Positions 37,725-63,466 of a stretch of 64,000 bases of DNA are shown one piece after another. Both the position numbers and the translations under genes were made by a program. How positions within the stretch are numbered: position 1 is the stretch's first letter; every line of letters starts with the position of its first letter. The stretch covers positions 433,195 to 497,194 of the IMG/VR virus record IMGVR_UViG_3300017971_000185; one strand, given 5' to 3'. Below the pieces are notes generated by a model. The model searched no databases. It saw nothing but the letters and a program-made list of their open reading frames with translations, and had not been told where the DNA came from.

Positions 37725-37746
37725 TAGCGGCTGAGAGGCAGAATGG

Positions 37747-37782
37747 AACCCCGGTGGCTTCGGCCTCCGGGGTTTTCTTTTT
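37747..37782 (+). terminator. Rho-independent terminator
   Basis: AACCCCGG-TGGC-TTCG-GCCT-CCGGGGTT followed by TTCTTTTT. Confidence 0.88.
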
Positions 37783-37826
37783 GCTTGTGGGGCGTATTTG
37801 GGGCGCGGTAGGATACCCAGGACCCT

Positions 37827-38810: not shown

Positions 38811-39597
38811 CTCGACTGACGCACTTCGAAAATATCGTGAGGGATTGCGTGGAACGGCTAAGTATCGTGAGATGCGGGAGTATGATTGGGATCGGGTCCG
38901 GGCCGATCCTGCCAAGCATGCCAAGCGAAGTAAGACCAAACGAATCAAGCATGCTCGACGGATGGAGGAAGACTCTGACTACAAGACCAAGGTGTTGGCG
39001 GGAAGTAAGAGAGCCAACGCTCGTTTGAGAGAGCTTCCTGAGCATGAACGCTCTGCCAAACTCCACAAGTGGCGTTTGAAGAGCAGCTATGGTCTTACGC
39101 CTGAAGACTACGAGGAGCTTTTGGCTTCTCAGGGGAATGCCTGCGCGATCTGCCAGACCAAAGAGCCTGGCGGTAAGCGTAAGGTCTTTTCTGTAGACCA
39201 TTGCCATGAGTCGGGAAAAATCCGGGGGCTTTTGTGTGCTGGCTGTAATCTGGGGTTGGGTAAATTCAAGGATGATCCTGAGCTGCTTTGTTCAGCCATC
39301 GCCTATCTGAAAGCAGCAGAAGGAAAGCCGTCTCCTGAGGATATGCTTCATACAGTCACCTGTTCTGATTGTGGGAAGCGGTGGAAGACCAGGAGAGTCA
39401 GAGGATTGGTTTGTCCAGAGTGCGAGGAAAAGCGGGCTCAGGAACGAGAGCGGCGTTGGAGGTTGCGTAGAACCAAACAGTGTCCCACATGCGGTGGTGG
39501 GTTTGTGGATGAAACGCAGGCCAACAACCGTAAGTACTGTTCTTCTCTGTGCTTGGCCAAGGCACAGGCTGTGCGTCGGAAGGAGCGGGATGCGTAG
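38803..39597 (+). CDS. Endonuclease VII-family His-Me nuclease with zinc ribbons
   Basis: YGLTPEDYEELLASQGNACAIC..VDHCHESGKIRGLLCAGCN. Confidence 0.88.
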   Translation: MSSSTDALRKYREGLRGTAKYREMREYDWDRVRADPAKHAKRSKTKRIKHARRMEEDSDYKTKVLAGSKRANARLRELPEHERSAKLHKWRLKSSYGLTPEDYEELLASQGNACAICQTKEPGGKRKVFSVDHCHESGKIRGLLCAGCNLGLGKFKDDPELLCSAIAYLKAAEGKPSPEDMLHTVTCSDCGKRWKTRRVRGLVCPECEEKRAQERERRWRLRRTKQCPTCGGGFVDETQANNRKYCSSLCLAKAQAVRRKERDA

Positions 39598-42055: not shown

Positions 42056-42470
42056 CGTCCAATTGACTCTGATCGAGGGTGACCGGGATCGCGAGTTTTA
42101 CGCGGATATGGGTCCTTTCTTTGCGAGCGCCGAGGTAAGTAAAGAGCTTGGTTCGCCCCTTTATGATGAAGCGGGATCTTTTTGGGTGATTGCCCGGAAG
42201 GCCAAGAAGGTCGTGGGGTGGTCCGTGTTTCGGATTCGGAAGGACGGAGTTGCTGTGTTTGATTGGACCTACGTGGTGCCGGAATGGCGACAGGAGGGCT
42301 TGTGGGAGCGGCTTTACGATTTCAAGATGGACTGGTTGCGTGAGCGCGGGGTGGCGCGCGTGAATACCGCAACCAGTGATGAGGACATGCAGAGGGCGTT
42401 CAAGAAGCGCGGGTGGCGCGTCCGGCGCGAGAAGGGAGCTTGGTTGTTTTACGAGAGGGAGGTGTTCTGA
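42048..42470 (+). CDS. GNAT-family acetyltransferase
   Basis: TYVVPEWRQEGL (V.P..R..G. acetyl-CoA motif), FKKRGW. Confidence 0.7.
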   Translation: MSNVQLTLIEGDRDREFYADMGPFFASAEVSKELGSPLYDEAGSFWVIARKAKKVVGWSVFRIRKDGVAVFDWTYVVPEWRQEGLWERLYDFKMDWLRERGVARVNTATSDEDMQRAFKKRGWRVRREKGAWLFYEREVF

Positions 42471-43120
42471 TGTCTGAGACGCTTCTGGCGCGCGCGGAGG
42501 AGCTTTTTGCTGAGCTAGACGTCATGGGCCTTGAGGAGCGTGTGGAGGCTCTCAATGGTCTACGGAAGCTCCTACATGCTCATAGTCCGTTTCGAGAGGA
42601 GCCTGTGGACTGTCTCCAGTGGGTACCGGAGAAGGGGGTCAGGGCCAACTCTTACAATCCCAACGTCGTGTCTCCCGTGGAGATGGAGCTTTTGGCCCAC
42701 TCGATCAAGTCGGATGGGTACACGCAGCCAATTGTCGGCTTTTATACGGGGGGCGAGTATGAGGTTGTGGATGGGTTTCATCGGAATCGGGTGGGGAAGG
42801 AGGATGGTGAGATTCGGGAGCGCATTCACGGGTACTTGCCGCTGGTAGTGATCAACGAGGAGCGCAGGGGGATCAGGGATCGGATGGCGGCGACAATTCG
42901 TCACAATCGTGCTCGGGGGCGGCACCAAGTCAGCGGGATGGCTGAGATTGTGGTTGAGTTGTCACGACGCAAGTGGAAGGATGAGCGTATTGCGAAGGAG
43001 CTTGGTATGGACCCTGATGAGGTCTTGCGGCTCAAGCAGATTACCGGACTTGCTGAGGCTTTTCGGGATCGAGAGTTTTCCAAGGCGTGGGAGCCTGAGC
43101 TTGACGGAGGCGACACATAA
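42470..43120 (+). CDS. ibrB: ParB/Srx-like (IbrB/YbdM-like) protein
   Basis: ANSYNPN, SIKSDGYTQPI, VVDGFHR, TIRHNRARG; TGATG coupling. Confidence 0.82.
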   Translation: MSETLLARAEELFAELDVMGLEERVEALNGLRKLLHAHSPFREEPVDCLQWVPEKGVRANSYNPNVVSPVEMELLAHSIKSDGYTQPIVGFYTGGEYEVVDGFHRNRVGKEDGEIRERIHGYLPLVVINEERRGIRDRMAATIRHNRARGRHQVSGMAEIVVELSRRKWKDERIAKELGMDPDEVLRLKQITGLAEAFRDREFSKAWEPELDGGDT

Positions 43121-49471: not shown

Positions 49472-49500
49472 TTGACTCGGCGCAGGTCTCCAAGTATGGT
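49472..49500 (+). promoter_or_regulatory. Sigma70-type promoter of the cas operon
   Basis: TTGACT-N17-TATGGT; GGAG RBS at 49550-49553. Confidence 0.7.
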
Positions 49501-49563
49501 GGCGGGTGGCGGCGCACGGGGCGCGGCTGTCTCAATCTACCACCAACATGGAGATCAGATCAG

Positions 49564-50532
49564 ATGAAAACACCAAGTCTCAAGAGACTCGATTGGATGG
49601 CTTTCTTCGAATCGGAGTTGGGCATCTGCAATGGAGACCCGGACAATCCGGGTTATCCGAGGATGACGGAGGACGGCTATCTGGTGATCAGCGGTCCTTT
49701 CCTGAATCGTCTGGGACGCAATCAGTACGAGCGCATGGTGGAGACGGGCGAGCTGCCCGCAAAGGGGAATGCGATCCACATTCAGCGTGGAGCCCGGCTT
49801 GCTAACGTTGCTGAGGAAGCCATTGCTGCGGCTGATCCCAAGGAAGCCGGGAAGATCTTGGAGGATGCCCGTAGTAAGCGCGACAAAGAGGCTGAGGAGG
49901 GGAAGAAAAAGACAAGAGCCCGGTCGAGTGTCAAGTATCCAGAGGAGAAGGTTCACGATGCGCTGACTCGCACGTTCATCGATGACGCGATGTACGGATC
50001 GGTCTTGACGAGCACAGTTTACACAGCCCCTTCCATTCACGGCGCCGTCACTACGCGTATGGGCATGTCTCTTCATCCTGTGGAGCTACACAACATGACC
50101 AACACGCGCATGGCGTCTGATAGTGATGCGGTGGACCGTTCTCGCGACTTCGCGCGCTCTAAACCGGTTCGCTACGCGCTCATTCGCACTGTGGGAACCT
50201 TTGATGCTTTTCGGGCTGAGAAGAACCATGTCGATGCTGAGCGTCTCAAGGATTTCTTTGCCGTCTATCTGACGATGTGCGACAACGCGACATCGAATGC
50301 GCGCGGAACCTTCGGCCTTCGGGAGTTGATTGTGGTCAAGCACAAGAGCCCCACAGGCAGCATGAGTCTGATCGATTTCAAGGATCGGCTCAAGGTGCGT
50401 ATGCGGAATGGGGAGTGCCCGCGCTCGTTTGCCGACATCGAGCTTGGCTATGATGACAAGAACCTCCCTCCGGGGGCTGAGATCATCCGACTGGCTGAGC
50501 TACGGGGGAACTTGGATTGGCTGGTTAGCTGA
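49564..50532 (+). CDS. cas7: Type I-C Cas7 (Csd2), divergent
   Basis: CNGDPDNPGYPRMTEDG, FIDDAMYGSV, GAVTTRMGMSLHPV..TNTR. Confidence 0.85.
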   Translation: MKTPSLKRLDWMAFFESELGICNGDPDNPGYPRMTEDGYLVISGPFLNRLGRNQYERMVETGELPAKGNAIHIQRGARLANVAEEAIAAADPKEAGKILEDARSKRDKEAEEGKKKTRARSSVKYPEEKVHDALTRTFIDDAMYGSVLTSTVYTAPSIHGAVTTRMGMSLHPVELHNMTNTRMASDSDAVDRSRDFARSKPVRYALIRTVGTFDAFRAEKNHVDAERLKDFFAVYLTMCDNATSNARGTFGLRELIVVKHKSPTGSMSLIDFKDRLKVRMRNGECPRSFADIELGYDDKNLPPGAEIIRLAELRGNLDWLVS

Positions 50533-51197
50533 TGCCAAGTGTTTACTTTCAGGGCGACTTCGCCCACTTTTCCAACCCGCTGCTGAAGGCCGAGGGGACT
50601 ACCTTTCCCGGCCCTCCGCCTTCGGCTCTCCGCGGAGCCATTGAAAACATCCTGTTCAAGATGGGCGTCTACGTGGATGTCCGCCGCATCACGTACCACC
50701 GGCCGATTCGGACGATGAACTTCAAGACGAACGGCCTCAAACATGCGGTAGGCATGTCGCAGATCACGCTCCCGGATGCCCATCAGATGAACAACACGTT
50801 GCTCTACGACGTGGCCTATACAGTGGACTTCGATCTGCGCTTGTGTTGGCGTGACCGAGAGACCCAAGAGATCGTTAAGTTCGATGAGAGGGTGCTGGAG
50901 AGCCAGGATCTTCGGAAGTACATGGCGATGTACGAGAAGTATATCCGCCTGGGTAAGTGTCAGCACCCGCCTTGGCTGGGGTCGAAATTCTGCGAAGCTC
51001 TGTTCAGGGCACCCCGGCCCGAGGACACGCCGATTCAGGAGTCGCGGGACTTGGGGATGATGACGCACGGCATCGAGTACCGTAAGGCGGGGAACATCAC
51101 CCATGTCTTTCATCCGGTGATGAGAGACGGGGTTGTAGAGGTGGACTCGTTCTTCGATGTTCTCAAGGCCCGCTACGGGTTGAGGGCGGGTCAATGA
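50532..51197 (+). CDS. cas5: Type I-C Cas5 (Cas5c/Cas5d)
   Basis: GDFAHFSNP..PPPSALRGAIENI, LLYDVAY, PPWLG, DLGMM, PVMRDGVVEV. Confidence 0.88.
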   Translation: MPSVYFQGDFAHFSNPLLKAEGTTFPGPPPSALRGAIENILFKMGVYVDVRRITYHRPIRTMNFKTNGLKHAVGMSQITLPDAHQMNNTLLYDVAYTVDFDLRLCWRDRETQEIVKFDERVLESQDLRKYMAMYEKYIRLGKCQHPPWLGSKFCEALFRAPRPEDTPIQESRDLGMMTHGIEYRKAGNITHVFHPVMRDGVVEVDSFFDVLKARYGLRAGQ

Positions 51198-52870
51198 TTC
51201 GTCTCGACACACTCGTTGCCTTGGGGCAACGGGAAAAACTCGGCTATCTGCTCGATGACCAGCGGCCCTATGGGGAAGTTGTGTTGGATGCGGAGGGCCA
51301 CATCATCACTGTTCGCAAATCCTCTGGGGCGGTTCCCGTCCCAGACTTGCCCAATCGCACCAACTCCGAGTTGCGCATTGGGATGTATGTCGAGAACGAG
51401 ATGTATCTCTTTGGGACGACTCCGAAGGAGTACAAGGACCCCACGAAGCCTAGGAAAGCGCTGGAGCACGCTGCTGAAGCCTATGCCAAGATCGCCAAGG
51501 AAGTGCGGATCAAAGCCACACAGGCGGTCGCGCGGTTCTACGACTTGTCTCTAAGGGGCAAGCACAAGGTGCCGAAGGGGTGGCGATTTCAGCGGTATGT
51601 GTTTGTCTATAAGGACCAATACCTGCCCAGCGTTCCGCAGCTTCGCCCTGTGATTGAGAAATTTGTAGATGCCATTCCTAGCGTGGACAGCATCGAAAGG
51701 CAGTGCTTGATTACGGGAGAGTGGGTGCGGTGTCAGACGACGCCCCACGCAAACACCAAAGGACTTAGCTCCAACTCCAGTGGAGCGTCCTTTGTGAGTT
51801 TCAATGGGACAAGTCAGTACCAGGGGCGTCCCGAGGATCGGTTCTTGACGGCTCCCATCGCCCCTGGTGTATCTCGACTCATGACTTCAGCGCTTTCGTG
51901 GTTGAGCCGGAATCGTAGAATCCAACTCACGCCCGATCTCAATGTCTTGGTCTGGACTGAGGAAGGCCACCCGCTAGAGGCTCTCGGGCCGAAGTTGTTT
52001 GCGCCAGAGAAGGAGTCCCGAGAACAGCGAACGAAACGCGAAGAGGAAGCCGTTGGTGACCTCTTCGCTCATCCTGAGTGGGATGAGAGCACGGAGGCCG
52101 CCTACCTCCTGACAACGACTGGGAATATGGGTCGCTTCGCGGTCCGTGAGTGGGAGGAAACGACTGTCGGCAGGCTCTCTGCCAATCTGAGGCGGTTCGT
52201 TCAGGACTTCACAGTCGAGATCACAGTTGGGGAAGAGGAAGTCCAAGCTCGTCACACGTCTCTCTCGCGGCTGTACGCAGCGTGGTCCGATAGGCAGGTG
52301 GTACACCGTGACATCCTTGCCCTAGCCAACATGGCGCTCAAAGGAATGCCGGTACCAGAGTGTGCGTGGCCCTCCGGTGCGCCAGAAACCATTATCCAGA
52401 AAGCCATCTTTCAAGCGTATAGGAAACGGAACATGGAGAATCCAGGAAATTTCACAGCGGACATCAGCGTAGACGGGCAGTCGAATGCTTACCGGATGGG
52501 ACGGGCTTGTGCCGTCATGGAGGACGCTCGGTACAGCGCGAACAGAGCCAACAGTCGGGGGGTGATCGCGCACAATGTGGTTGACAACCCGTCTGTTGGG
52601 TTTCACCGGGCGATGCAGTCCATCATCCACCATTTGCCCAAGCGCCCAGGCAATCAGTACGCTGAGAGTCTCAGCGTGTTCACCAGCGGGATCGAAATTC
52701 CTGATCGGTTTGCTGTTCGGGAGCAGAACGAGTTTTGGCTGGGGTATCTCTACGAGCAGGGCCGTCAAAGCTACTTGTATAGGCTGGGGCGCGATGCCAA
52801 GAGCGCCAAGAAGAGCGAGCAGGGCGCGGATGGCCAGGACGTAGACGCCAGGGCATTGCTTGATGATTGA
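51194..52870 (+). CDS. cas8c: Type I-C Cas8c (Csd1)
   Basis: CLITG..PH..KG..ASFVSFN, TSALSWL, VLVW, AYRMGR..FWLGY. Confidence 0.82.
   Translation: MIRLDTLVALGQREKLGYLLDDQRPYGEVVLDAEGHIITVRKSSGAVPVPDLPNRTNSELRIGMYVENEMYLFGTTPKEYKDPTKPRKALEHAAEAYAKIAKEVRIKATQAVARFYDLSLRGKHKVPKGWRFQRYVFVYKDQYLPSVPQLRPVIEKFVDAIPSVDSIERQCLITGEWVRCQTTPHANTKGLSSNSSGASFVSFNGTSQYQGRPEDRFLTAPIAPGVSRLMTSALSWLSRNRRIQLTPDLNVLVWTEEGHPLEALGPKLFAPEKESREQRTKREEEAVGDLFAHPEWDESTEAAYLLTTTGNMGRFAVREWEETTVGRLSANLRRFVQDFTVEITVGEEEVQARHTSLSRLYAAWSDRQVVHRDILALANMALKGMPVPECAWPSGAPETIIQKAIFQAYRKRNMENPGNFTADISVDGQSNAYRMGRACAVMEDARYSANRANSRGVIAHNVVDNPSVGFHRAMQSIIHHLPKRPGNQYAESLSVFTSGIEIPDRFAVREQNEFWLGYLYEQGRQSYLYRLGRDAKSAKKSEQGADGQDVDARALLDD
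52433..52870 (+). CDS. cas11: Putative Cas11c by internal translation of cas8c
   Basis: AGGA..CGGA RBS and in-frame ATG just before the SNAYRMGR segment, where type I-C Cas11 normally begins. Confidence 0.55.
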   Translation: MENPGNFTADISVDGQSNAYRMGRACAVMEDARYSANRANSRGVIAHNVVDNPSVGFHRAMQSIIHHLPKRPGNQYAESLSVFTSGIEIPDRFAVREQNEFWLGYLYEQGRQSYLYRLGRDAKSAKKSEQGADGQDVDARALLDD

Positions 52871-55070
52871 CGTGTGTCAATTCGTCACCGGCCTCTCCTC
52901 GGACAGAGGAGAGGCCGAATCTTCTGGCCCCGACTCTCTGTGGGAGCATCAGCAGTTTGGGTTCCTTGATGTAGTAGACCACATCCTGAATCGGAAGGAG
53001 AAGCAAGTTGGGCTGTCTGGCCAGCCAGGGTGTGGTAAGACGCGCCTTACGACGTATATTGCGGCTTACTTGGCCAAGTCTCCGGTGTCTCCTATCACTA
53101 GAGTAGTCGTTGTGGTCCCGACCCAGATCATTCGGGACCAGTACAGAGGACAGAAGTCTGTAGTCCGGTTTGGGGCTGTTGAGGACGTAGCTGGGGAGGG
53201 CCCGAACAACAAAGCTGTCATCTCGGTCCCTGACATTGACTTAGGGAAGCTGATAGACCCTATGGTGGCTGGTCCAAAATATCTCGTGGACCACGTCACA
53301 GGTGCCGGCAAGCCGAGAGTCATCCTTGCCACGACTATGGACACCTTTCGCAGAGCCCTAGATTGCATTGGCGACATGAGCCATGTGTTAGTCGTTCTCG
53401 ATGAGGCGCATCGGTTCCCTGTAGGAGAATTCAAAGCATGGGCAAAGGCCAGAGTCGCTTGTGAGGAGAAGAGTGCCACTATCCTTGCCACGACGGCTAC
53501 GATGTACCGAGCGGACGGGCTTCCGATTTGTCCTGGTGCGTACATACACCAAATTCCCCGGATCAAACTGATTGAGGCTGGCCTCTGCCCAAGTCGCTTT
53601 CCTGTAAAGGTTGTTCTCCTTCCCTCCGTCGCTAAGACAGCGACGGAGGTAGTGGATGTCCGTGTGAAAGGGGAAGGAACGGAAGGAACCCTTGTAGAGC
53701 TTCTGACCGATGACGATCTCCGTTTTGGGGTGCGGCATTGGGTTGGTCTGGGATGCCCGTTTGGCCTCATGCGATGCCAAACCCAGGCGTTGACCAAGCG
53801 CTTGAAAGAAATTGTCGAGGAGGAGTGTCCCCACCTGAAGGCTGAGGAGGTGGGGCGCCCCGTTGTGGATCTTTCGGGCAAAGAGGTAGACAAGATGTGG
53901 CCCGTTGTGGATCTTTCGGGTTCCAAGGTGAACAAGGCGTTGGAGGCCCAGATTGCGCATGATGGCCGTGTGCGGCATGCCAATGAGATACGGACACAGC
54001 TAGTTGTGGGCATTCGACGTGTTGAGTGTGGTTTCGACTGGCCTCCGGTATCTCATGTCTTCAACTTCGGGCTCATTTCGTCTGAGACCCTCCTGGCCCA
54101 GCTTCGAGGACGGGGTTGGCGTTCGAAGACGAGATACGAGGGCTACCCTGAGCGGTTTCGGGATGAGGCGTGGCTCATCATGTTTGTGCCGACTGTGTCA
54201 GAGGAAGCTCGAACGGAGTTTCTGAGGAGCCCTGATCATCTCAAGCTGTTGATGATCATCGCGGCGACCACGGTCAATGAAGAGGCAGGTACTCTGCTGT
54301 CGTTCATCCATGATGAGATCCAGAAGGGGTTGTCGCGGTATGTGCGTGGGTACCGGGACCAGTTGCAGGTCATCCGTATCCTGGGGGCCCTCAACCCTGA
54401 GCCCAGAGAGATGGACGAAATACGGGCTGATCTTGGAAAGATCGAGACTCGGCTCGGAGGCGATGTGTCCGTTTCGGACTACATCAGAGAGATTGTCTTA
54501 GAGTCGCGGGACGAGAAGAAGCGTGGGGTCGTGAAGAGAAAGTGGTCGAGACGACGGAAGCTCGGAGCCCTGATTCTTTTGTTGGGGCAGAAGGGTCAGT
54601 CCAAGAAAGAGACCGCGCGGCTGATTCGGGAGCTTCTGGACAAGAAGAAATCGGTTACGCTCGTGGAGAGTCCTGAGCAGGTTTCAGATGAGGTTCGCTC
54701 CGTGCTTGCAGATGCTCTCAATCAGTTGGTTGAGAAGCATGGCGACATTGTTACCTTCACGGACACATACGAGGAGATGGCGGCCACCATGAACACCGAT
54801 GTGGACACTATCCGTCGCATGCAGCGAGAGGTGGACCGTCTGACACAATTCAAGCCTCGCAGCTATCAGGTTGCTGTTGAGGCTGTTAGCCAAGAGTTGG
54901 TTCACTGCGGAAGGCGGTGGAAGGTTCTCCAGGACCTTTCCGGGCCTCTTGGCTTGGACCCAGGGACCTACACAATGCGTCATCTCGATCGCGATCTACG
55001 ACATCAGGTGTTGAAAGGCCAGCCAGAGGACATCAACAGTTTGAGAGACTTGAGGCATGCGTTTCGGTAA
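52860..55070 (+). CDS. SF2 (DEAH) helicase without HD nuclease domain
   Basis: LWEHQ, GQPGCGKT, LDEAH, TAT, VECGFDWP, QLRGRGWR; motif I starts ~50 aa from the N-terminus. Confidence 0.8.
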   Translation: MMIDVCQFVTGLSSDRGEAESSGPDSLWEHQQFGFLDVVDHILNRKEKQVGLSGQPGCGKTRLTTYIAAYLAKSPVSPITRVVVVVPTQIIRDQYRGQKSVVRFGAVEDVAGEGPNNKAVISVPDIDLGKLIDPMVAGPKYLVDHVTGAGKPRVILATTMDTFRRALDCIGDMSHVLVVLDEAHRFPVGEFKAWAKARVACEEKSATILATTATMYRADGLPICPGAYIHQIPRIKLIEAGLCPSRFPVKVVLLPSVAKTATEVVDVRVKGEGTEGTLVELLTDDDLRFGVRHWVGLGCPFGLMRCQTQALTKRLKEIVEEECPHLKAEEVGRPVVDLSGKEVDKMWPVVDLSGSKVNKALEAQIAHDGRVRHANEIRTQLVVGIRRVECGFDWPPVSHVFNFGLISSETLLAQLRGRGWRSKTRYEGYPERFRDEAWLIMFVPTVSEEARTEFLRSPDHLKLLMIIAATTVNEEAGTLLSFIHDEIQKGLSRYVRGYRDQLQVIRILGALNPEPREMDEIRADLGKIETRLGGDVSVSDYIREIVLESRDEKKRGVVKRKWSRRRKLGALILLLGQKGQSKKETARLIRELLDKKKSVTLVESPEQVSDEVRSVLADALNQLVEKHGDIVTFTDTYEEMAATMNTDVDTIRRMQREVDRLTQFKPRSYQVAVEAVSQELVHCGRRWKVLQDLSGPLGLDPGTYTMRHLDRDLRHQVLKGQPEDINSLRDLRHAFR

Positions 55071-55689
55071 GGCCAAGGAAGTTTCGCGGGAGAACAATCT
55101 CCTTCACGTGATGAACAGCTATTTGCTGTTCTCGGGCGGCAAGATGCGAGTCGATTGGCTGGAGGTGCCGGGCGAAGGCTCTCCGATGGTGAGAATCCTT
55201 CGATCCTATCTCGTACCGGGCGTGTCCAAGCTCGTTTGTTTGGATCGTAACGCCGAGTACGTCCGGGAGGGCGAGGAGCAATACGGGAGTGAGATCTGCG
55301 AGTGGGTTTTGGCCGATGACTTGTTTGCCGAGCTAGCTAATTCACCGGACAAGTACGCTAACGTAGGGGTTCTGAATGTCGATCTCTACAACAGCCTTCG
55401 TCTGCTCGAATTCCCCGAACAGATGCGGATCGTCATGGAGTTTGCCACACGCCAGTTCTGGGCGATCGGGGCCTTCATGGTGTTTCTGAACTACTCGATG
55501 CGAGGCAGTGTTCGCGAGGAGTTTGCTCAAGACGTGATCAAGACTCTGGAGCCTTATCTAGATTTGTCACAGGTTGATCTCACTGATGAGGGCTACCTGT
55601 ACAAAGGAGGAACGCCTGACCAACCAGGCAACCGGAGATTGAATCTTCGGATACACCTAGGACCAACAAGGACACCGAACAATGAGTAA
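55057..55689 (+). CDS. Putative class I SAM-dependent methyltransferase-like protein
   Basis: Rossmann-like order WLEVPGEGS (motif I), LVCLDRN (acidic end of beta2), VLNVDLY, VFLNYS. Confidence 0.45.
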   Translation: MRFGKAKEVSRENNLLHVMNSYLLFSGGKMRVDWLEVPGEGSPMVRILRSYLVPGVSKLVCLDRNAEYVREGEEQYGSEICEWVLADDLFAELANSPDKYANVGVLNVDLYNSLRLLEFPEQMRIVMEFATRQFWAIGAFMVFLNYSMRGSVREEFAQDVIKTLEPYLDLSQVDLTDEGYLYKGGTPDQPGNRRLNLRIHLGPTRTPNNE

Positions 55690-56020
55690 GAAGAACGATG
55701 ATCTGGAGGCGGTTCGTGTGATCGCTGATGCGCTTGAACCGTTTGATGATGTCGTCAGGGAGCGTATTCTGAAATGGGCATGTGAGCGGGTCGGGATGCA
55801 CCCCAAGGAGATCAAGATCATACATGAGACACAAACTGCCTATTCGGAAGACGGTGGGGGTGGGAAGAGCCCCGCCGAGAAGGCAGCCAGGACCAGGAAG
55901 GCCAATGCTGAGAAGCGCTCTGAGGCCGCCAGGAAAGCGAACAAGACCAGGGGGAAGAAGGGGCGATCCGAGGCCGCAAAGAAGGCAGCGGCTACGCGTC
56001 GTGCTTGTCAGGCTGCCTAG
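55682..56020 (+). CDS. Small protein with basic histone-H1-like AxKAxxTR repeats
   Basis: AEKAARTRK, EAARKANKTRG, EAAKKAAATRR. Confidence 0.65.
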   Translation: MSKKNDDLEAVRVIADALEPFDDVVRERILKWACERVGMHPKEIKIIHETQTAYSEDGGGGKSPAEKAARTRKANAEKRSEAARKANKTRGKKGRSEAAKKAAATRRACQAA

Positions 56021-56026
56021 AGGCAG

Positions 56027-56076
56027 AAAAGCACGCTACGGGTCGCGTGAGCGCCTCCTAGTTTTGCGTGCCTTTT
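56027..56076 (+). terminator. Hairpin closing the cas operon
   Basis: AAAAGCACGC..GCGTGCCTTTT inverted repeat after the last stop. Confidence 0.45.
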
Positions 56077-56229
56077 CCTGAGGTTTCCTTCTGCGGGGCG
56101 ATTGCGAGTACAACGAGCTTTCTGACATTCGCAGAGTAGAACACGTCAGCGCTGTTCAGGCGCGCGATTTCACCCCTCGTGCATAACCTGCGATTACGAG
56201 CAATGATTTCAGCAGGTTCTAAGCCAAGG

Positions 56230-56558
56230 GTTTCCGCCCTGTTACGGGGCGGTTGCGATTACAAGGAAGAGCCGCTGGACCTGAGCGCAGCCACCAAGCT
56301 GTTTCCGCCCTGTTACGGGGCGGTTGCGATTACAAGAGCCGTGAACGAGCAGGAATGCGCCCAAATCCTGGCCGAGTTTCCGCCCTGTTACGGGGCGGTT
56401 GCGATTACAAGGCCATGAGCTTGGCGCTCATTGATTCGAGGGCCGCTGCGTTTCCGCCCTGTTACGGGGCGGTTGCGATTACAAGATCGAGATTCTGCGG
56501 TGGACACGCGCCAGCATGTTGAGTTTCCGCCCTGTTACGGGGCGGTTGCGATTACAAG
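56230..56558 (+). CRISPR. Block A: 5 identical 36-nt repeats
   Basis: GTTTCCGCCCTGTTACGGGGCGGTTGCGATTACAAG at 56230, 56301, 56376, 56450, 56523; spacers 35, 39, 38, 37 nt. Confidence 0.97.
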
Positions 56559-56592
56559 GATTGCACGGCCTACGAGGGGTTTCCGCTCTCTC

Positions 56593-56836
56593 TTCCGTCT
56601 CCGGCCTCGAATCGAGGAGGCGGTTTCGATTGCAACGCACGCGGATGCGAAACTCCGTCTTCTCCAAGTCTGTCTCCGCGGGAGGCGGTTTCGATTGCAA
56701 CATGTCGTGCGTCGAGACATCCAGAGTGGGTTCCGTCTCCGCGGGGAGGCGTTTCGATTGCAACACCAACGGCGGTCAGGGAGTTGGAGCATGGGATTGC
56801 GTTCCGTCTCCGCGGGGAGACGGTTTCGATTGCAGT
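56593..56836 (+). CRISPR. Block B1: 4 variant repeats
   Basis: Consensus GTTCCGTCTCCGCGGGGAG(G/A)CGGTTTCGATTGCAAC at about 56593, 56668, 56730, 56801. Confidence 0.85.
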
Positions 56837-56863
56837 ATGTTGGTGGTGGAATCCTCGCCGAGT

Positions 56864-56893
56864 AGAGCCCCCTCAAACGAGGGGGCTCTTTTT
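56864..56893 (+). terminator. Intrinsic terminator inside the array
   Basis: AGAGCCCCCTC-AAAC-GAGGGGGCTCT (11-bp stem) followed by TTTT. Confidence 0.85.
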
Positions 56894-56939
56894 CCCAGTC
56901 TTCGATTACAACTACGCCATTCGGCCCCAAGGCGATCTC

Positions 56940-57345
56940 GTTTCCGCCCTCCTGCGGAGCGGTTGCGATTACAACGCTCTCACCGGCCTCAGTGTTCTCT
57001 ACTCCTTCTGGTTTCCGCTCCTCTGCGGAGCGGTTGCGATTACAACTACCGGACCGACAGCTACACCAATCTGATCAGAAAATCGAGCACCGTCGCATCG
57101 GACAGTGGTTTCCGCTCCTCTGCGGAGCGGTTGCGATTACAACTAATCGGTTTCCACCGCCGAGGGAGAACCCCGCACGTTTCCGCCCTCCTGCGGGGCG
57201 GTTGCGGTTACAACGTGACGGTCACAGGTCGAATTTCGTCTGCCCGGTCCGCCCTCCTGCGGGGCGGTTGCGATTACAACGCTACCGAGAGATCGCGGAA
57301 CGGTTGGGTGTTTCCGCCCTCCTGCGGGGCGGTTGCGATTACAAC
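56940..57345 (+). CRISPR. Block C: 6 repeats
   Basis: GTTTCCGC(C/T)C..TGCGG(G/A)GCGGTTGCGATTACAAC at 56940, 57011, 57108, 57179, 57247, 57310. Confidence 0.93.
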
Positions 57346-57376
57346 CTGCACGCTCAGCCGCCCACGAGGGTACGAG

Positions 57377-57841
57377 GTTCGTCTCCGAGGGAGACGGTTT
57401 CGATTGCAACCAGATGTGGGATGCAGTGTCCGTGTCCGCCTCTCACGGAGGCGGTTTCGATTGCAATTTCGTTGGCTCTCACTGATCGGTTTTTCGTGTT
57501 CCGTCTCCGAGGAGGCGGTTTCGATTGCAACCCCACTGACCTCAGCGCCATACGACGGTTCCGTTCCGTCTCCGAGGAGACGGTTTCGATTGCAACCTCC
57601 ACCCACGTCGTGTAGGTGCCGCCCCGTAGAGGGGCGGTTTCGATTATAACACGCGGGACTCGGGAAGAAGTTGAACCCGGATCGTTGGGTCCGCCCTTTT
57701 GGGCGGTTTCGATTACAACAATCAAGGTGGTACGTCATTTCGGGAGAGGGAGCGATTGCGATTACAACCGCATGATGTCCTGGATGGGCTTGATCGTTGA
57801 GGTTTCCGCTCTCTGCGCTACGGAGGGCGGTTGCGATCAAC
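57377..57841 (+). CRISPR. Block B2 plus hybrid/degenerate repeats
   Basis: B-type at 57377, 57434, 57498, 57563; hybrids at 57616, 57689; degenerate at about 57746 and 57802. Confidence 0.85.
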
Positions 57842-60103: not shown

Positions 60104-61216
60104 GTGACCAAGGAAAGCAAATTCAAGCAACGCGTGCGTGATCGTATGGAGAGGACGGGCGAATCCTACGCTACTGCTCGACGCAACGAGAATGAGGCTG
60201 CGGGTTTGATCGAGGAGATGAAGGCAGTGGATGCTGAGCTTAGTGAGCTAGAGAAAGCTCAGCTAGAGCGCGAGAAGGTCAATCGTCAGTGGGTGAAGGA
60301 CAACCCAGGGCTCAAGGTTGTGACGCTGACGTTGACGCATAACGAGCACGGGACGCCGACGATTCACGTGTCGGGTCCTGAGCTTACGTCCATCCAGATC
60401 ACCCAGCCGCCTGACGTATACGTGGAAGCCATCCGACAGGCGTACCAGGACAACGAGTGGGCGAAGAACCCGAAGGACGATCTTGGTGATCTTCCCGAGT
60501 GTCGTTTGGAGGACTCCAAGCGCAAAGAGGACTTTGTCTACGAAAGCGGACCCGCGCCCGAGGGCACGATTCATGAGGACTTTGATGCGTTGGTGGCGGC
60601 GCTGTACAAGGTGAAGGGCCGTGTCATGTCTGTGGATCATCCGAACCATGGGCTTGTCGGGTTTGTGGAAACCGAGACGGACAAGTACCACTGGATACGG
60701 ATCAAGCCGACTCTTGCCTGGACTGAAACGGTCGCTTGGGAACATCTAGAGCTTTGGGGCCTGATGCAGACGCCGCGAGGGCGTTGCAAGGCCGCGGGTC
60801 TTTTCAGCCAGGAAGAGATGCTGGCGAAGGTGTCGTCGGCTCTAGAGGGCTGGTGGAAGAGTGCCTCTCCGTTTCCGACCAATCCTGATCCTGCGGAGAT
60901 CGTTGCTCCGCTTTCTGGAGAAGCGTTGGCTGATGTGTTTGCTCACGTCGAGAAATTCGATGTTTCGGTTGAGGCGATTGTGATGTCGGCGCGCAGTTTC
61001 CATGAGGTTTGTAAGCACGCAAGCGACAGCATCCGCTTGGAAACTCGTGCCCGGCTGATGAAGAAAGGGCTAATGGGTCGCCTGTGGGATGCTCTCGTGA
61101 TCACGACCCGAGAGATCGATGAGGATGAGATATGTTTCTTGGGTCGGGATCCCGAGGGGAAGTGGGTGTGTCACTCGCTTCGTGTGATTCGGCCATCTGC
61201 GCAGGGTTCAGAGTGA
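60104..61216 (+). CDS. Protein with C-terminal partial MCP paralog
   Basis: N-terminal KFKQRVRDRMERTGESYATARR; 60902-61111 is 28/70 identical, ungapped, to MCP 37323-37532. Confidence 0.8.
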   Translation: MTKESKFKQRVRDRMERTGESYATARRNENEAAGLIEEMKAVDAELSELEKAQLEREKVNRQWVKDNPGLKVVTLTLTHNEHGTPTIHVSGPELTSIQITQPPDVYVEAIRQAYQDNEWAKNPKDDLGDLPECRLEDSKRKEDFVYESGPAPEGTIHEDFDALVAALYKVKGRVMSVDHPNHGLVGFVETETDKYHWIRIKPTLAWTETVAWEHLELWGLMQTPRGRCKAAGLFSQEEMLAKVSSALEGWWKSASPFPTNPDPAEIVAPLSGEALADVFAHVEKFDVSVEAIVMSARSFHEVCKHASDSIRLETRARLMKKGLMGRLWDALVITTREIDEDEICFLGRDPEGKWVCHSLRVIRPSAQGSE

Positions 61217-63466
61217 CCTTCCGTGTTTTCGGAAGGCGATCCCGAGATTCCTTGCCCTGAGCTTGTCGTCTGCCCAGCACAGCCTGCATTCGCTACACGT
61301 CAACCCGGACAAGGTCTGCGCCGGGCAAGGGGCCAGCGACCAACCCGTCCCAGGTACCTGGAATACCTGACCGTCGGGAGATAGAGCAGGCACAATGACG
61401 GCAGGCGCGTACCCCATTGACACGACCCTCTTGATGTCTTCCACCGTGTCACAGGAGCCAAGGACGCTCGCCCGCCGAAACGCGGCGCGTGGGATCCACG
61501 CTGCCGAGTGAGTGTACGTCCACAGAGCCGTTCCCCTGTTCGCCAACCACCAGTCCGCGAGCCCAGCAACCATTTTTGCCTGACCGACCGTCGTCACGTC
61601 TCCACCACCATCGTGTAGACATAAGGCGAGCCCTTGGGGATCGGGAAATTTCTCCTTCGCAAGTTTGGCCTCAGCCGCGATAATTTCGTCGGCCGTCCAG
61701 TTTCCGTCTTTCGCTATTCGCTCAAGCCGCTTTGAGTTGCAAGGGTGTGCGTAGCATCCGTTGTCGCGCAGGGGGCAACTTGGCGGGCATGTTTGTTTGA
61801 TGGGAATCGAGGTTGAGATGATTTGAGAGATCGGCTTGGAGCCTCGGATCGGTGCATGTATTGCGACGGGTGGTTGGCGCGTTTTTGAAGAGATCCCGTG
61901 TTTGCGGAGATGGCAGATCACAGTTGATGGGGACACTTCCAGAGCTTGAGCGATGGTTTGATTGGTTGCTCCCTCTGCTACCATCTGTCGAAGAACATCC
62001 GCATCGAGGGGCTTGGGTTTCGGCCGCTCGATCCCATGTTTGCGGAGATGGTACGCCACAGTTGATGGGGACACTTCCAGAGCCCGAGCGATGGTCCGAT
62101 TGGTTGCTCCCTCTGCCACCATTTGTCGAAGAACATCCGCATCGAGCTTTCGAGCGGTGGTTTGGTTGGGTTTCTCTGCCACAACCTTCCGCTCGATCCC
62201 GTGTTTGCGGAGATGGTACGCCACAGTTGATGGGGACACTTTCAGAGCCCGCGCGATGGCCTGATCGGTTGCTCCCTCTGCTACCATCTGTTGAAGAACG
62301 TCCGCATCGAGAGTTTTCTGTTTCGGCCGCTCGATCCCGTGTTTGCGGAGATGGTACGCCACAGTTGATGGGGACACTTTCAGAGCCCGCGCGATGGCCT
62401 GATCGGTTGCTCCCTCCATCGTCATTTGTCGAAGAACATCCGCATCGAGGGGCTTGGGTTTTGGCCGCTTGATCCCGTGCTTGTGGAGATGGTACGCCAC
62501 AGTCGAGATAGACACTTTCAGAGCCCGAGCGATGGTCCGATTGGTTGCTCCCTCCATCACCATTTGTCGAAGAACATTCGCTTCTATGGTGGTTTTGCAG
62601 CGCTGCGATGGTGGAGGGGCGGCCTTCCAAAGCTCCTGTTGCCATTCGGAGAAACTGTCGAAATCGCGTCCGTTAGTGTAAGCCCATCGTTTGAGGAGAC
62701 GGCTGCGTTTGGGTTCGGGCGTCTTGCACCAAGCGATGTAATTCAGCAGCCATCGAAAGTTGGTCAGGGTTTTCGGAATCTCTGCGGGAAACCTTCGTGG
62801 GAAGATTTGTCGGAGGATTCTCTGAAGAGTCTCTTGTTTCCAGGCTCTAGTCTCGATCTGGAAAGGCGCGTACCACCCTGCCTTTTTTCCAGCAGACATC
62901 CAGGCTTGGATTTGAGCCTTGGTCTGGTCGGCCGATGCGTATTCTCTGCGGTACGATTTAGAGAAAAAATGCTTTCCGTCCGGCAGGCTTTCCAGCAAGC
63001 GTTTCTGTTTCGGTTCGATTTTTCCGAGAACGTATCGCCTGCGCCATGTTTCTAGCCACCATTTCCACTTTTTCTGGGAGCGTAGTTCCCAAAGAGATTG
63101 AGACTTTGTTAGGTGCTTGAGTCGGGTGATCCTGTCAAGCCATCGGGCGTGTGGGTATTTGCCGTCATTGTGGACTCGGTTGTTCCAGGTCCACCCGTCT
63201 AAGCTCTCAAGCAGCCGTATGCGATCTTGTGTTAGCTCTCCGTTGCGGTACATTCGGCGCTGATAAGCTATCCATTTCCCTATTGGTCGTCCGTCTCTTC
63301 GATCCGTGTAGCGGATTTGGTCGGCGCCACCACGTTCTTCCGATTCGGCAAGCACTTCGTAGTACGTCCCCATCCACTGGGCTGTCGAAAACGGTTGTGA
63401 TCGCTTCCGCCATCTTCGAAGGTCCCTCATCCAGTCTTTTTCGACGCACTGATCTCGGCTTGGCAT
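61208..63466 (-). CDS. Fusion: helicase-associated (HA)-like repeats + 5 HTH repeats + Cys-rich gp88-like domain
   Basis: IGKWIAYQRRMY..RIRLLESLDGWTW; 5x LDADVLRQM..HLRKHGI; TCPPSCPL..GCYA, LHDGGGD, WTYTH, CPAQT..CSECRLC. Confidence 0.75.
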   Translation of the reverse strand: MPSRDQCVEKDWMRDLRRWRKRSQPFSTAQWMGTYYEVLAESEERGGADQIRYTDRRDGRPIGKWIAYQRRMYRNGELTQDRIRLLESLDGWTWNNRVHNDGKYPHARWLDRITRLKHLTKSQSLWELRSQKKWKWWLETWRRRYVLGKIEPKQKRLLESLPDGKHFFSKSYRREYASADQTKAQIQAWMSAGKKAGWYAPFQIETRAWKQETLQRILRQIFPRRFPAEIPKTLTNFRWLLNYIAWCKTPEPKRSRLLKRWAYTNGRDFDSFSEWQQELWKAAPPPSQRCKTTIEANVLRQMVMEGATNRTIARALKVSISTVAYHLHKHGIKRPKPKPLDADVLRQMTMEGATDQAIARALKVSPSTVAYHLRKHGIERPKQKTLDADVLQQMVAEGATDQAIARALKVSPSTVAYHLRKHGIERKVVAEKPNQTTARKLDADVLRQMVAEGATNRTIARALEVSPSTVAYHLRKHGIERPKPKPLDADVLRQMVAEGATNQTIAQALEVSPSTVICHLRKHGISSKTRQPPVAIHAPIRGSKPISQIISTSIPIKQTCPPSCPLRDNGCYAHPCNSKRLERIAKDGNWTADEIIAAEAKLAKEKFPDPQGLALCLHDGGGDVTTVGQAKMVAGLADWWLANRGTALWTYTHSAAWIPRAAFRRASVLGSCDTVEDIKRVVSMGYAPAVIVPALSPDGQVFQVPGTGWSLAPCPAQTLSGLTCSECRLCWADDKLRARNLGIAFRKHGRSL
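61884..62587 (-). repeat. Five tandem HTH-coding repeats (period 138 nt, one 165 nt)
   Basis: Near-identical units, e.g. CATCCGCATCGAG recurring at about 61997, 62135, 62299, 62437. Confidence 0.92.

What the first reader, a model, noticed from the sequence alone, without database searches (positions are those of the whole stretch)
49472..57841. Phage type I-C Cascade coupled to a non-Cas3 helicase and a methyltransferase-like protein: candidate new CRISPR effector system
Seen: promoter, then cas7-cas5-cas8c-helicase-MTase-like-basic protein with every junction overlapping (50532, 51194, 52860, 55057, 55682), then the array. No HD nuclease, cas1, cas2 or cas4 is visible in the window. Known: canonical I-C order is cas3-cas5-cas8c-cas7-cas4-cas1-cas2; Cas5c processes crRNA, so Cas6 is not needed; nuclease-free Cascades can silence targets. 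Inference: an RNA-guided complex that unwinds, silences or chemically marks DNA of competing phages or host rather than degrading it. Phage type I variants lacking Cas3 have been reported in general. Whether this helicase+MTase combination is known needs a search.
Basis: partly seen in the sequence, partly recalled or inferred. Interest (0 to 1): 0.93.

Follow-up and report, generated by a model that had tools for sequence, protein, structure and literature searches.

The report
Huge-phage Cascade with helicase–methyltransferase-like partners
A giant phage carries a CRISPR targeting complex (type I-C Cascade) that lacks the usual DNA-shredding enzyme Cas3 and instead always travels with a different DNA motor, a methyltransferase-shaped protein and a small basic protein. 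This gene set recurs in about a dozen very divergent phage-like contigs, the Cascade-plus-helicase part was already noted in 2020, and its mode of action is untested.

Summary
One overlapping operon encodes cas7, cas5c, cas8c, a 735-aa SF2 helicase, a 210-aa protein and a 112-aa basic protein, followed by a repeat-spacer array (56230-57841).

- **Missing genes:** no cas3/HD, cas1, cas2 or cas4 was recognised in the ORFs tested. The window is the last 64 kb of a 497-kb IMG/VR phage contig.
- **Helicase:** it is not Cas3. No Cas3 model matches, and its family profile is closest to XPB, Rad54 and HsdR.
- **210-aa protein:** an AlphaFold model (pLDDT 82) has a class I SAM-methyltransferase fold. 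An Asp at the motif IV position is invariant, but the glycine-rich motif I is degenerate.
- **Co-conservation:** 11 other loci at 20-40% identity link this helicase clade to I-C Cascade genes. The 210-aa protein lies directly downstream in 10 of the 11 loci (window included) that extend past the helicase.
- **Co-evolution:** the Cas8c and helicase trees share the same three sub-clades.
- **Origin:** the helicase and methyltransferase-like pair also occurs without Cascade and is fused in one locus, so Cascade is joined to a pre-existing module.

The Cascade-plus-helicase variant was reported by Al-Shayeb et al. 2020. I found no mention of the other partners. Most likely mechanism (inferred): RNA-guided, nuclease-free interference by a recruited translocase, possibly with methylation.

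The parts
49472..49500 (+). Promoter-like site (TTGACT, 17 nt, TATGGT) 64 nt upstream of cas7. Weak evidence only.
   Evidence: 9 of 12 consensus matches. The number of such sites in the region is not above the shuffled expectation.
49564..50532 (+). cas7 (Csd2-like, 322 aa).
   Evidence: Pfam Cas_Cas7 7e-37. TIGR02589 cas_Csd2 3e-29, below its trusted cut-off. PADLOC Cas7b/c 1e-36. 24% identical to the L007 homologue.
50532..51197 (+). cas5c (Cas5d-like, 221 aa), the presumed pre-crRNA endonuclease. No cas6 is present.
   Evidence: Pfam Cas_Cas5d 6.5e-11. PADLOC Cas5c 3e-30. PDB Cas5d/Cas5c chains 3kg4, 8g9t and 7kha match at 6e-12 to 4e-9. Catalytic residues were not checked.
51194..52870 (+). 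cas8c (Csd1-like large subunit, 558 aa), very divergent.
   Evidence: Pfam Cas_Csd1 1.4e-42 over the full profile. The nearest database relatives are only 21-24% identical. It groups with the Cas8c of L032 and L033 in a tree that mirrors the helicase tree.
52860..55070 (+). SF2 helicase/translocase (735 aa from the ATG at 52863). It is ResIII/XPB-like, has no HD domain, and carries a clade-specific C-terminal domain of about 250 aa.
   Evidence: ResIII 1.8e-10, DEAD and Helicase_C. No Cas3 model in PADLOC or NCBIfam. The family profile's best PDB hits are XPB 6e-7, Rad54, RIG-I-like, DinG and HsdR, with no Cas3 among 52 hits. Walker A lies at residues 54-61. DEAH 180-183, T213 and QxxGRxxR 413-420 are invariant in alignment A1.
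55057..55689 (+). p210: a class I methyltransferase-fold protein and obligate partner of this helicase family.
   Evidence: No Pfam, NCBIfam, PHROG, PADLOC or PDB sequence hit. AlphaFold2 with an 8-sequence alignment gives pLDDT 81.7 and pTM 0.83. Foldseek top hits are all SAM methyltransferases, for example 4pon at 1.7e-7, in PDB and BFVD. D33, D109 and N145 are invariant in 19 homologues. It is fused to the helicase in L031.
55682..56020 (+). p112: a small protein with a basic C-terminal tail made of ARTRKAN / KAWETRR-type repeats.
   Evidence: Translation. Small basic proteins with the same repeat motif follow p210 or the array in L007, L032, L034, L036, L045 and L046. No family hit.
56021..56229 (+). 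Leader-like spacer region containing one degenerate repeat unit (56079-56114).
56230..56836 (+). Array part 1: 5 identical 36-nt repeats, then 4 units of a second repeat class. The 3' handle is TTGCGATTACAAG or TTTCGATTGCAAC. Inter-hairpin segments (spacer plus repeat 5' flank) are about 32-43 nt.
   Evidence: Each unit folds into a 7-8 bp GC hairpin immediately 5' of the 13-nt handle.
56865..56892 (+). Strong terminator-like hairpin followed by a T-run, in the middle of the array.
   Evidence: stem CCCCTC...GAGGGG followed by CTCTTTTT.
56900..57841 (+). Array part 2: about 14 units of at least four further repeat classes. The last two are degenerate.
   Evidence: Compensatory CG-to-UA changes occur in three stem pairs. 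Tandem Repeats Finder does not report the array.

Best explanation
This is a huge-phage, adaptation-less and Cas3-less derivative of type I-C CRISPR-Cas.

**Shown**
- One operon encodes a complete I-C Cascade (Cas7, Cas5c, Cas8c).
- It also encodes an XPB/ResIII-like SF2 translocase with intact ATPase motifs.
- It also encodes a class I methyltransferase-fold protein that always accompanies this helicase family, and is fused to it in one relative.
- It also encodes a small basic repeat protein, followed by an array of hairpin-plus-handle repeats on the same strand.
- The set is conserved and co-evolves across about a dozen loci.
- The helicase and methyltransferase-fold pair also exists without Cascade, so the pair is older than its link to Cascade.

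**Inferred**
- Cas5c cuts the array transcript at the base of each hairpin.
- Cascade binds complementary double-stranded DNA and forms an R-loop.
- Cas8c, or the R-loop itself, recruits the helicase-p210 complex in place of Cas3.
- The motor then translocates or unwinds from the R-loop and blocks transcription or replication of a competing element or host gene without cutting. This is how type IV-A Cascade works with CasDinG.
- p210 may additionally methylate nucleic acid along the path, or may act only as a structural partner.
For: - **Gene identities and overlaps:**
- **Helicase is not Cas3:** no Cas3 model matches. The profile hits XPB, Rad54 and HsdR but no Cas3. There is no room for an HD domain, because Walker A sits at residues 54-61. 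Catalytic motifs are invariant.
- **p210 fold:**. Invariant D33, D109 and N145 across Cascade-linked and stand-alone members argue for a conserved active or ligand site.
- **Physical coupling of helicase and p210:** fusion in L031. They are adjacent in nearly every locus with enough sequence.
- **Coupling to Cascade:** the same architecture appears in L007, L032-L038, L045 and L046, with variants in L047 and L048.
- **Single clade:** all eight helicases then known to be Cascade-linked fell in one clade of 12 (SH-aLRT 91). Two of its four members of unknown context, and members of both sister lineages, later proved Cascade-linked too.
- **Co-evolution:** the Cas8c tree has the same three sub-clades.
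- **Arrays:** they follow the accessory genes, with 27 or more regular repeats in L007, about 59 in L045, and heterogeneous arrays in the window and L034.
- **No cas3, cas1, cas2 or cas4** in any visible flank.
Against: - No biochemical or genetic data exist.
- No spacer target was found, so it is unknown what the system targets, or whether it targets DNA at all.
- p210 has no significant sequence match to any methyltransferase family. The best is E = 0.11 for one member and 0.44 against RlmI.
- p210's glycine-rich SAM loop is reduced to a single conserved Gly.
- One Cascade-linked lineage (L048) shows no p210 within 2.8 kb downstream.
- Only 64 kb of a 497-kb genome was visible, so a trans-acting nuclease is possible.
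- The window's array is irregular and interrupted by a terminator-like hairpin. This could mean reduced function.
Confidence: 0.6

Rival explanations
1. Ordinary destructive interference with a split effector. The helicase replaces only the motor half of Cas3, and a separate nuclease cuts the target. That nuclease could be an HD Cas3''-like or other enzyme, encoded elsewhere in the 497-kb phage genome or supplied by the host.
For: Split Cas3'/Cas3'' systems are established in type I. Only 64 kb of the genome was visible. XPB-type helicases work with partner nucleases in archaea (Bax1; established knowledge).
Against: None of the 12 loci shows a nuclease gene in the operon or in the visible flanks. 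The partner that is conserved is a methyltransferase-fold protein, not a nuclease.
Confidence: 0.2
2. p210 is a catalytically dead methyltransferase-fold adaptor. It bridges or regulates the helicase, and the system acts purely as an RNA-guided roadblock or translocase.
For: Motif I is degenerate (E-L-x-G only). The acidic residue at the end of beta-2 varies among D, E, N and S. No methyltransferase HMM reaches significance.
Against: Three polar residues (D33, D109, N145) are invariant across 19 sequences that share about 20-40% identity. D109 sits at the catalytic motif IV position. That pattern is more typical of an enzyme or ligand-binding site than of a scaffold.
Confidence: 0.35
3. Chance neighbourhood. 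The helicase and p210 are ordinary phage replication, transcription or modification genes that happen to lie between the cas genes and the array.
For: The pair exists without Cascade in many contigs. In related phages (L018, L028) the stand-alone helicase follows homologues of window genes 25354-38810.
Against: The same order, with overlapping or abutting ORFs and the array placed after the accessory genes, is kept in about a dozen loci at 20-40% identity. Cascade-linked helicases form their own clade, and the helicase and Cas8c trees agree.
Confidence: 0.03
4. Decaying remnant. The window's locus is a degenerating CRISPR-Cas system that has lost Cas3 and the adaptation genes, and its array is eroding.
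For: Repeats are heterogeneous. Spacing is irregular (inter-handle distances of 36-138 nt). A terminator-like hairpin lies inside the array, and the terminal units are degenerate.
Against: All six ORFs are intact and identical in three metagenomes. Repeat differences are compensatory and preserve a 7-8 bp hairpin plus a 13-nt handle. A second member (L034) has the same kind of array, while others have long regular arrays.
Confidence: 0.05

Closest known systems
Huge-phage 'type I-C variant' with a helicase instead of Cas3 (Al-Shayeb et al. 2020, Nature 578:425, PMC7162821, Extended Data Fig. 9)
   Same: It is found in huge phages and has I-C-like Cas7, Cas5 and Cas8. It has no Cas6, Cas1 or Cas2, and an unidentified helicase takes the place of Cas3. 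This window fits that description in every respect I could test.
   Different: The accessible text of that paper mentions two related phages that also carry CasPhi. No CasPhi is seen in this window. In the text I could read, the paper does not mention the methyltransferase-fold protein, the basic repeat protein, the stand-alone helicase-p210 module or the heterogeneous arrays. I could not tell whether this phage is one of those two.
Canonical type I-C CRISPR-Cas (Dvulg subtype)
   Same: The Cas7, Cas5c and Cas8c families match. There is no Cas6, and repeats have a 3' stem-loop followed by a short handle ending in ...ACAAC or ...CAAG.
   Different: There is no Cas3 and no Cas4, Cas1 or Cas2. 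The gene order is cas7-cas5-cas8c instead of cas5-cas8c-cas7. The cas proteins fall below NCBIfam trusted cut-offs. Three extra conserved genes are present.
Type IV-A CRISPR-Cas (Csf Cascade plus CasDinG helicase)
   Same: It is carried by a mobile element and usually lacks adaptation genes and a nuclease. A multisubunit crRNA complex is paired with a non-Cas3 helicase. Published work shows nuclease-independent interference and gene silencing (abstracts seen).
   Different: The effector proteins are I-C proteins, not Csf. The helicase is an SF2 ResIII/XPB-like enzyme, not the XPD-like DinG. Type IV-A has no methyltransferase-fold partner. The resemblance is functional and convergent, not membership.
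Restriction-modification and defence systems that pair a ResIII-type SF2 translocase with a methyltransferase (type I HsdR/HsdM, type III Res/Mod, DISARM, BREX)
   Same: A ResIII-family motor is encoded next to a class I methyltransferase-fold protein. HsdR is among the PDB hits of the helicase profile.
   Different: There is no endonuclease domain and no specificity subunit. p210 matches no DNA methyltransferase family by sequence. The stand-alone form instead carries Helicase-associated (HA, PF03457) repeats.

Membership tests
Type I-C CRISPR-Cas | Cas7 (Csd2), Cas5c (Cas5d) and Cas8c (Csd1) effector genes | tested here: met
   Pfam, NCBIfam and PADLOC hits at 1e-11 to 1e-42. The scores are below NCBIfam trusted cut-offs, so these are divergent members.
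Type I-C CRISPR-Cas | Cas3 (HD nuclease plus SF2 helicase), the signature gene of type I | tested here: not met
   No Cas3 or HD model hit on any operon protein. None was found in the other window ORFs tested or in the flanks of related loci. The rest of the 497-kb genome was not visible.
Type I-C CRISPR-Cas | Adaptation module cas4-cas1-cas2 | tested here: not met
   Absent from the ORFs tested in the window and from the visible sequence of all related loci.
Type I-C CRISPR-Cas | No Cas6. The repeat carries a stem-loop plus a 3' handle for Cas5c processing. | tested here: met
   No Cas6 hit. Every unit has a 7-8 bp hairpin directly 5' of a conserved 13-nt handle. The Cas5c catalytic residues and processing itself were not tested.
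Huge-phage I-C variant of Al-Shayeb 2020 | Huge-phage context, Cas5d-like Cas5, no Cas6/Cas1/Cas2, and a non-Cas3 helicase in place of Cas3 | tested here: met
   The contig is a 497-kb IMG/VR UViG. Gene content. Published description.
Huge-phage I-C variant of Al-Shayeb 2020 | A second CasPhi (Cas12j) system in the same genome | not testable with these tools
   Only 64 kb of the genome is held. The 752-aa ORF at 61208-63466 is not CasPhi. It carries HTH repeats, an HA domain and DUF7227.
Cas3 helicase family (for the 735-aa protein) | N-terminal HD domain and a match to Cas3 helicase models | tested here: not met
   Walker A is at residues 54-61, so there is no room for an N-terminal HD domain. 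PADLOC and NCBIfam Cas3 models give no hit. There is no Cas3 chain among the 52 PDB profile hits.
SF2 helicases/translocases (ResIII/XPB-like) | Walker A, DEAH, motif III and motif VI (QxxGRxxR) are intact | tested here: met
   GQPGCGKT is in the window protein. D180, E181, H183, T213, Q413, G416, R417 and R420 are invariant in A1. ResIII 1.8e-10. XPB is the best PDB hit at 6e-7.
Class I SAM-dependent methyltransferases (for p210) | Seven-stranded Rossmann-like fold ending in a beta-6/beta-7 hairpin | tested here: met
   The AlphaFold2 model has pLDDT 81.7 and the topology b-a-b-a-b-a-b-a-b-a-b-b. There are 297 PDB matches at E <= 1e-3, and the top 50 are nearly all methyltransferases. BFVD gives the same picture.
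Class I SAM-dependent methyltransferases (for p210) | Motif I (E/D-x-G-x-G-x-G SAM loop) and an acidic residue at the end of beta-2 | tested here: inconclusive
   E/D36 and a single Gly (G39) are conserved, but the other glycines are absent. The beta-2 end residue is D, E, N or S.
Class I SAM-dependent methyltransferases (for p210) | Motif IV catalytic Asp/Asn at the end of beta-4 | tested here: met
   D109 is invariant in 19 sequences and lies at the end of strand 103-110. It aligns with the D of the DPP motif of RlmI in a weak profile hit.
Class I SAM-dependent methyltransferases (for p210) | Significant sequence match to a methyltransferase family; SAM binding and methyl transfer | tested here: not met
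   No Pfam, NCBIfam or PDB sequence hit is significant. The best are 0.11 and 0.44. Biochemical activity cannot be tested here.
Type IV-A CRISPR-Cas | Csf1/Csf2/Csf3 effector proteins and a CasDinG helicase | tested here: not met
   The effector proteins are I-C families. DinG is only a weak partial hit for the helicase profile (4.6e-5 over about 50 residues). The likeness is functional only.

The most novel reading that the evidence does not exclude
A natural RNA-guided nucleic-acid modification system. Cascade would position an ATP-driven translocase whose obligate partner is an active methyltransferase. The phage could then write methyl marks on, or reprogram, chosen DNA (or RNA in the R-loop) of hosts or rival elements instead of cutting it.
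Probability: 0.2. Interest if true: 0.92.

Novelty: new member of a known kind. Interest (0 to 1): 0.68.

Why it matters
Nuclease-free CRISPR systems have each revealed a new use of RNA guidance. Examples are type IV-A with DinG, the transposon-associated CASTs, and type V-M.

Here a type I Cascade is stably joined to a pre-existing helicase and methyltransferase-fold module. That is an independent case of a CRISPR complex recruiting a motor. If p210 is active, it could be the first natural RNA-guided methylation machine.

The system is compact (six genes, about 6.5 kb), and a dozen divergent orthologues are available for testing. The mutations that would separate roadblock, motor and methylation effects are clear.

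The heterogeneous arrays show that selection keeps only a hairpin and a handle. Standard repeat finders can miss such arrays, so phage CRISPR arrays may be under-counted.

Tried and rejected
- **Is the helicase a divergent Cas3?** Rejected. No Cas3 model or Cas3 PDB chain matches, and there is no HD domain.
- **Is the 752-aa ORF at 61208-63466 a CasPhi?** Rejected. It carries HTH repeats, an HA domain and DUF7227.
- **Word-index homologue searches.** Helicase and p210 returned only themselves, and Cas8c returned hits at 21-24% identity. The exhaustive HMMER search was needed to find relatives.
- **Single-sequence AlphaFold of p210.** Unusable, with pLDDT 36. It worked only after p210 homologues had been collected from the helicase loci.
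- **Spacer targets.** Nothing beyond self or chance was found in:
  - BLAST of the window, L007 and L045 arrays against 50,697 phage records;
  - short-BLAST of all spacers against the window and all fetched loci;
  - exact scans of three window spacers in IMG/VR.
- **Rfam on the array region.** Only sub-threshold chance hits.
- **tRNA scan of the window.** None found.
- **Small basic proteins.** No Pfam family and no literature hit for the repeat motif.
- **Reference genomes.** Only three MAG contigs carry the helicase family, so no host could be assigned.
- **Al-Shayeb 2022 Cell paper.** Not held. It may contain further description of this variant.
- **C-terminal domain of the Cascade-linked helicases.** It shows only weak similarity to the post-core regions of some stand-alone helicases, and none to classic HA-repeat proteins.
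Full report
**1. What is in the sequence**

Six + strand ORFs overlap at every junction:

| Gene | Coordinates | Size |
|---|---|---|
| cas7 | 49564-50532 | 322 aa |
| cas5c | 50532-51197 | 221 aa |
| cas8c | 51194-52870 | 558 aa |
| helicase | 52860-55070 | 735 aa from the ATG at 52863 |
| p210 | 55057-55689 | 210 aa |
| p112 | 55682-56020 | 112 aa |

- The first three are Cas7/Csd2, Cas5d/Cas5c and Csd1/Cas8c by Pfam, NCBIfam and PADLOC. Cas5 also matches solved Cas5c chains.
- These cas proteins are divergent. Scores fall below NCBIfam trusted cut-offs, and the nearest Cas8c in a 5.8-billion-protein index is 22% identical.
- The helicase start is taken as the ATG at 52863 because that matches the database protein P0001.
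- The promoter at 49472 is only a consensus match, at a frequency expected by chance.
- The window is the last 64 kb of a 497-kb IMG/VR viral contig. It recurs at 100% or near-100% identity (one mismatch in 21 kb) in two other metagenomes. One of those contigs breaks inside the array.
- It has no near match among 50,697 deposited phage genomes.

**2. The array**

- From 56079 to 57841 there are about 24 units.
- Each unit consists of a spacer-like segment, a 7-8 bp GC-rich hairpin, and a conserved 13-nt 3' handle. The handle is TTGCGATTACAA[CG] or TTTCGATTGCAAC.
- Only the first five repeats are identical. The rest fall into at least five classes whose stems differ by compensatory changes, for example CCGCCC/GGGCGG, CCGTCTCC/GGAGACGG and CCGCTCC/GGAGCGG.
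- A strong terminator-like hairpin lies in the middle, at 56865-56892.
- The hairpin-plus-handle design and its orientation fit Cas5c processing on the cas strand. That fit is inferred from established I-C biology.
- Tandem Repeats Finder does not report the array.
- A relative (L034/L035) has the same kind of array. It spans 3.4 kb of variable hairpins, each followed by GTGGGTTCAAG[CT].
- Other relatives have long regular arrays, with 27 or more repeats in L007 and about 59 in L045.

**3. The helicase is not Cas3**

- It has ResIII, DEAD and Helicase_C hits only. No Cas3 model matches in PADLOC or NCBIfam.
- It has no PDB sequence relative by single-sequence search.
- Walker A begins at residue 54, so no N-terminal HD domain can be present.
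- An exhaustive HMMER search of 1.84 billion representatives found 221 relatives, about ten of them aligned over the full length.
- The profile of the full-length family hits archaeal XPB best (6e-7). Rad54, RIG-I-like helicases, DinG and HsdR follow, and no Cas3 appears among 52 hits.
- All ATPase motifs are invariant.

**4. p210 has a methyltransferase fold**

- p210 has no hit in Pfam, NCBIfam, PHROGs, PADLOC or PDB, and no homologue by word index.
- Homologues were recovered next to helicase homologues.
- With an 8-sequence alignment, AlphaFold2 gave pLDDT 81.7 and pTM 0.83, with the class I methyltransferase strand order. The single-sequence model had been useless.
- Foldseek returned methyltransferases almost exclusively. 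Examples are YtqB/MnmM, NodS, rRNA methylases, fibrillarin, RlmJ and Hen1. The best E-value was 1.7e-7, with TM-scores of 0.5-0.65.
- In 19 homologues, D33, D109 and N145 are invariant.
- D109 ends strand beta-4, the motif IV position. It aligns with the DPP Asp of RlmI in a weak profile hit.
- Motif I keeps only E/D36 and G39.
- The fold is therefore supported. SAM binding is plausible but unproven.

**5. Co-conservation with Cascade**

The table lists the loci found; every member of the helicase clade that I looked up lies beside I-C Cascade genes.

| Locus | Contig or source | Gene order / note |
|---|---|---|
| L007 | 618-kb viral contig | cas7-cas5-cas8c-helicase-p210 |
| L032 | short contig | contig starts inside a 600-aa ORF that groups with Cas8c; then helicase, p210 and a basic protein |
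| L033 | | cas7-cas5-cas8c-helicase-p210 |
| L034/L035 | | cas7-cas5-cas8c-helicase-p210 |
| L036 | | cas7-cas5-cas8c-helicase-p210 |
| L037 | | cas7-cas5-cas8c-helicase-p210 (p210 cut by the contig end) |
| L038 | short contig | contig starts at cas8c; then helicase and p210 (cut by the contig end) |
| L045 | | as above, with a fragmented cas5 |
| L046 | | cas7-cas5-cas8c-helicase-p210 |
| L047 | | a shorter (431-aa) Csd1-family ORF, a 181-aa ORF, then the helicase; the contig ends 197 nt after the helicase |
| L048 | | cas5-cas8c-cas7-helicase; no p210 within 2.8 kb downstream |

- Protein identities to the window are 20-40%.
- p210 follows the helicase in 10 of the 11 Cascade-linked loci (window included) that have downstream sequence.
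- In the helicase tree, all eight helicases then known to be Cascade-linked fall in one clade of 12 (SH-aLRT 91). Two of the four members of unknown context (P0022, P0043) were later confirmed as Cascade-linked.
- Members of both sister lineages (P0020, P0042) are also Cascade-linked.
- The Cas8c tree recovers the same three sub-clades: (window, L032, L033), (L034, L045), and (L038, L007, L037, L036, L046). Cascade and helicase have therefore evolved as a unit.
- A small basic protein with KAWETRR / ARTRKAN-type repeats follows p210 or the array in the window, L007, L032, L034, L036, L045 and L046.
- No visible flank contains cas3, cas1, cas2 or cas4.

**6. Where the accessory pair comes from**

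- The helicase and p210 also occur together without Cascade in L010, L014, L015/L016, L017, L021, L022, L023, L024, L028 and L030, and in MAG contigs L040 and L041.
- In L031 they form one 1034-aa polypeptide.
- In these stand-alone forms the helicase core is followed by Helicase-associated (HA, PF03457) repeats. The repeats are either fused or split into up to four separate genes before p210.
- Two such contigs (L018, L028) share gene order with window genes 25354-38810 directly upstream of their helicase.
- The most economical reading is that an older phage helicase and methyltransferase-fold module became joined to a I-C Cascade and an array, and lost most of its HA repeats. This reading is an inference.

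**7. Mechanism**

- **Shown:** the composition, the intact motor motifs, the fold of p210, the fusion evidence for a helicase-p210 complex, and the co-evolution with Cas8c.
- **Inferred:** Cas5c-processed crRNAs guide Cascade to DNA. The R-loop or Cas8c recruits the helicase-p210 pair in place of Cas3. ATP-driven translocation then blocks or remodels the target without cutting, as described for type IV-A with CasDinG.
- **Alternatives:** methylation by p210 is a further possibility. A trans-acting nuclease is the main alternative.
- No target was found for any spacer. What the system is aimed at remains unknown.

**8. Relation to the literature**

- Al-Shayeb et al. [quoted passage not shown] They show its locus and a helicase tree (PMC7162821). 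The central observation is therefore published.
- I found no mention of this variant in three later papers:
  - the 2025 CRISPR-Cas classification (PMC12669027);
  - the 2023 terascale clustering survey (PMC10910872);
  - a 2024 review of CRISPR in mobile elements (PMC11656645).
- I found no functional study of it.
- The 2022 Cell paper on virus-encoded CRISPR-Cas is not held and may add detail.
- In the literature I could search, these points appear undescribed:
  - the conserved methyltransferase-fold and basic partners;
  - the breadth of the family;
  - its stand-alone ancestry;
  - the hairpin-plus-handle arrays with divergent repeats.

**9. Verdict**

The parts and their linkage are right, the claim of novelty is too strong, and the mechanism is still open.
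- I file the locus as a further member of an already noted but uncharacterised huge-phage I-C variant. Interest is 0.68, because the mechanism is unknown and readily testable.

Noticed in passing
window 61208-63466 (- strand); DNA repeats at 61892-62581: A 752-aa ORF with an N-terminal Helicase-associated (HA) domain, at least four tandem LuxR/GerE-type HTH units and a C-terminal DUF7227. The HTH units are encoded by 138-nt tandem DNA repeats that are 88-90% identical. HA domains also mark the stand-alone helicase-p210 modules.
   Followed up: partly
window 40808-42055 and 42413-43120: A PAPS-reductase plus DUF3440 protein (IbrA-like) followed by a ParB_N-domain protein (IbrB-like), 7.5 kb upstream of cas7. 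PAPS-reductase-like CysH proteins accompany type IV-B CRISPR systems, but nothing here links this pair to the Cascade operon.
   Followed up: no
window 25354-29925: A 1523-aa protein whose N-terminus matches the eukaryotic-type topoisomerase IB catalytic core (Pfam 4.8e-24). Homologues precede the helicase locus in L018 and L028.
   Followed up: no
window 30469-34584: A 1371-aa ORF interrupted by intein elements, with Hint domains at about residues 106 and 607, a LAGLIDADG_3 domain and an intein splicing domain. The host protein was not identified.
   Followed up: no
window 36852-37724, 37827-38810, 39371-40765; L008, L018, L028: A 290-aa protein with a weak Phage_capsid hit is 87-93% identical in three other contigs, while their neighbouring genes are only 32-74% identical. 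It is followed by one or two LAGLIDADG homing-endonuclease genes. A distant paralogue lies at 60104-61216, beyond the array.
   Followed up: partly
L031 4794-7898; L017 9980-16138: The same module appears as a single 1034-aa fusion (helicase, repeats, p210) in L031. In L017 it is split into six genes: the helicase, four HA-repeat proteins and p210.
   Followed up: partly
L034 6400-9800 (and L035): A 3.4-kb region holds dozens of different GC hairpins, each followed by GTGGGTTCAAG[CT]. The basic-repeat protein gene (8718-8972) is embedded inside it. This is a second example of an array whose repeats share only structure and handle.
   Followed up: partly
L045 17770-17917: An AcrVA2-like gene (precomputed Pfam PF26125) lies about 2 kb downstream of the 59-repeat array of a Cascade-helicase locus.
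   Followed up: no
L001/L042 (IMGVR_UViG_3300017991_002192): This 86.8-kb contig of the same phage ends inside the array, at window position 56687. That suggests an assembly break caused by the repeats, or by array variation in that sample.
   Followed up: no
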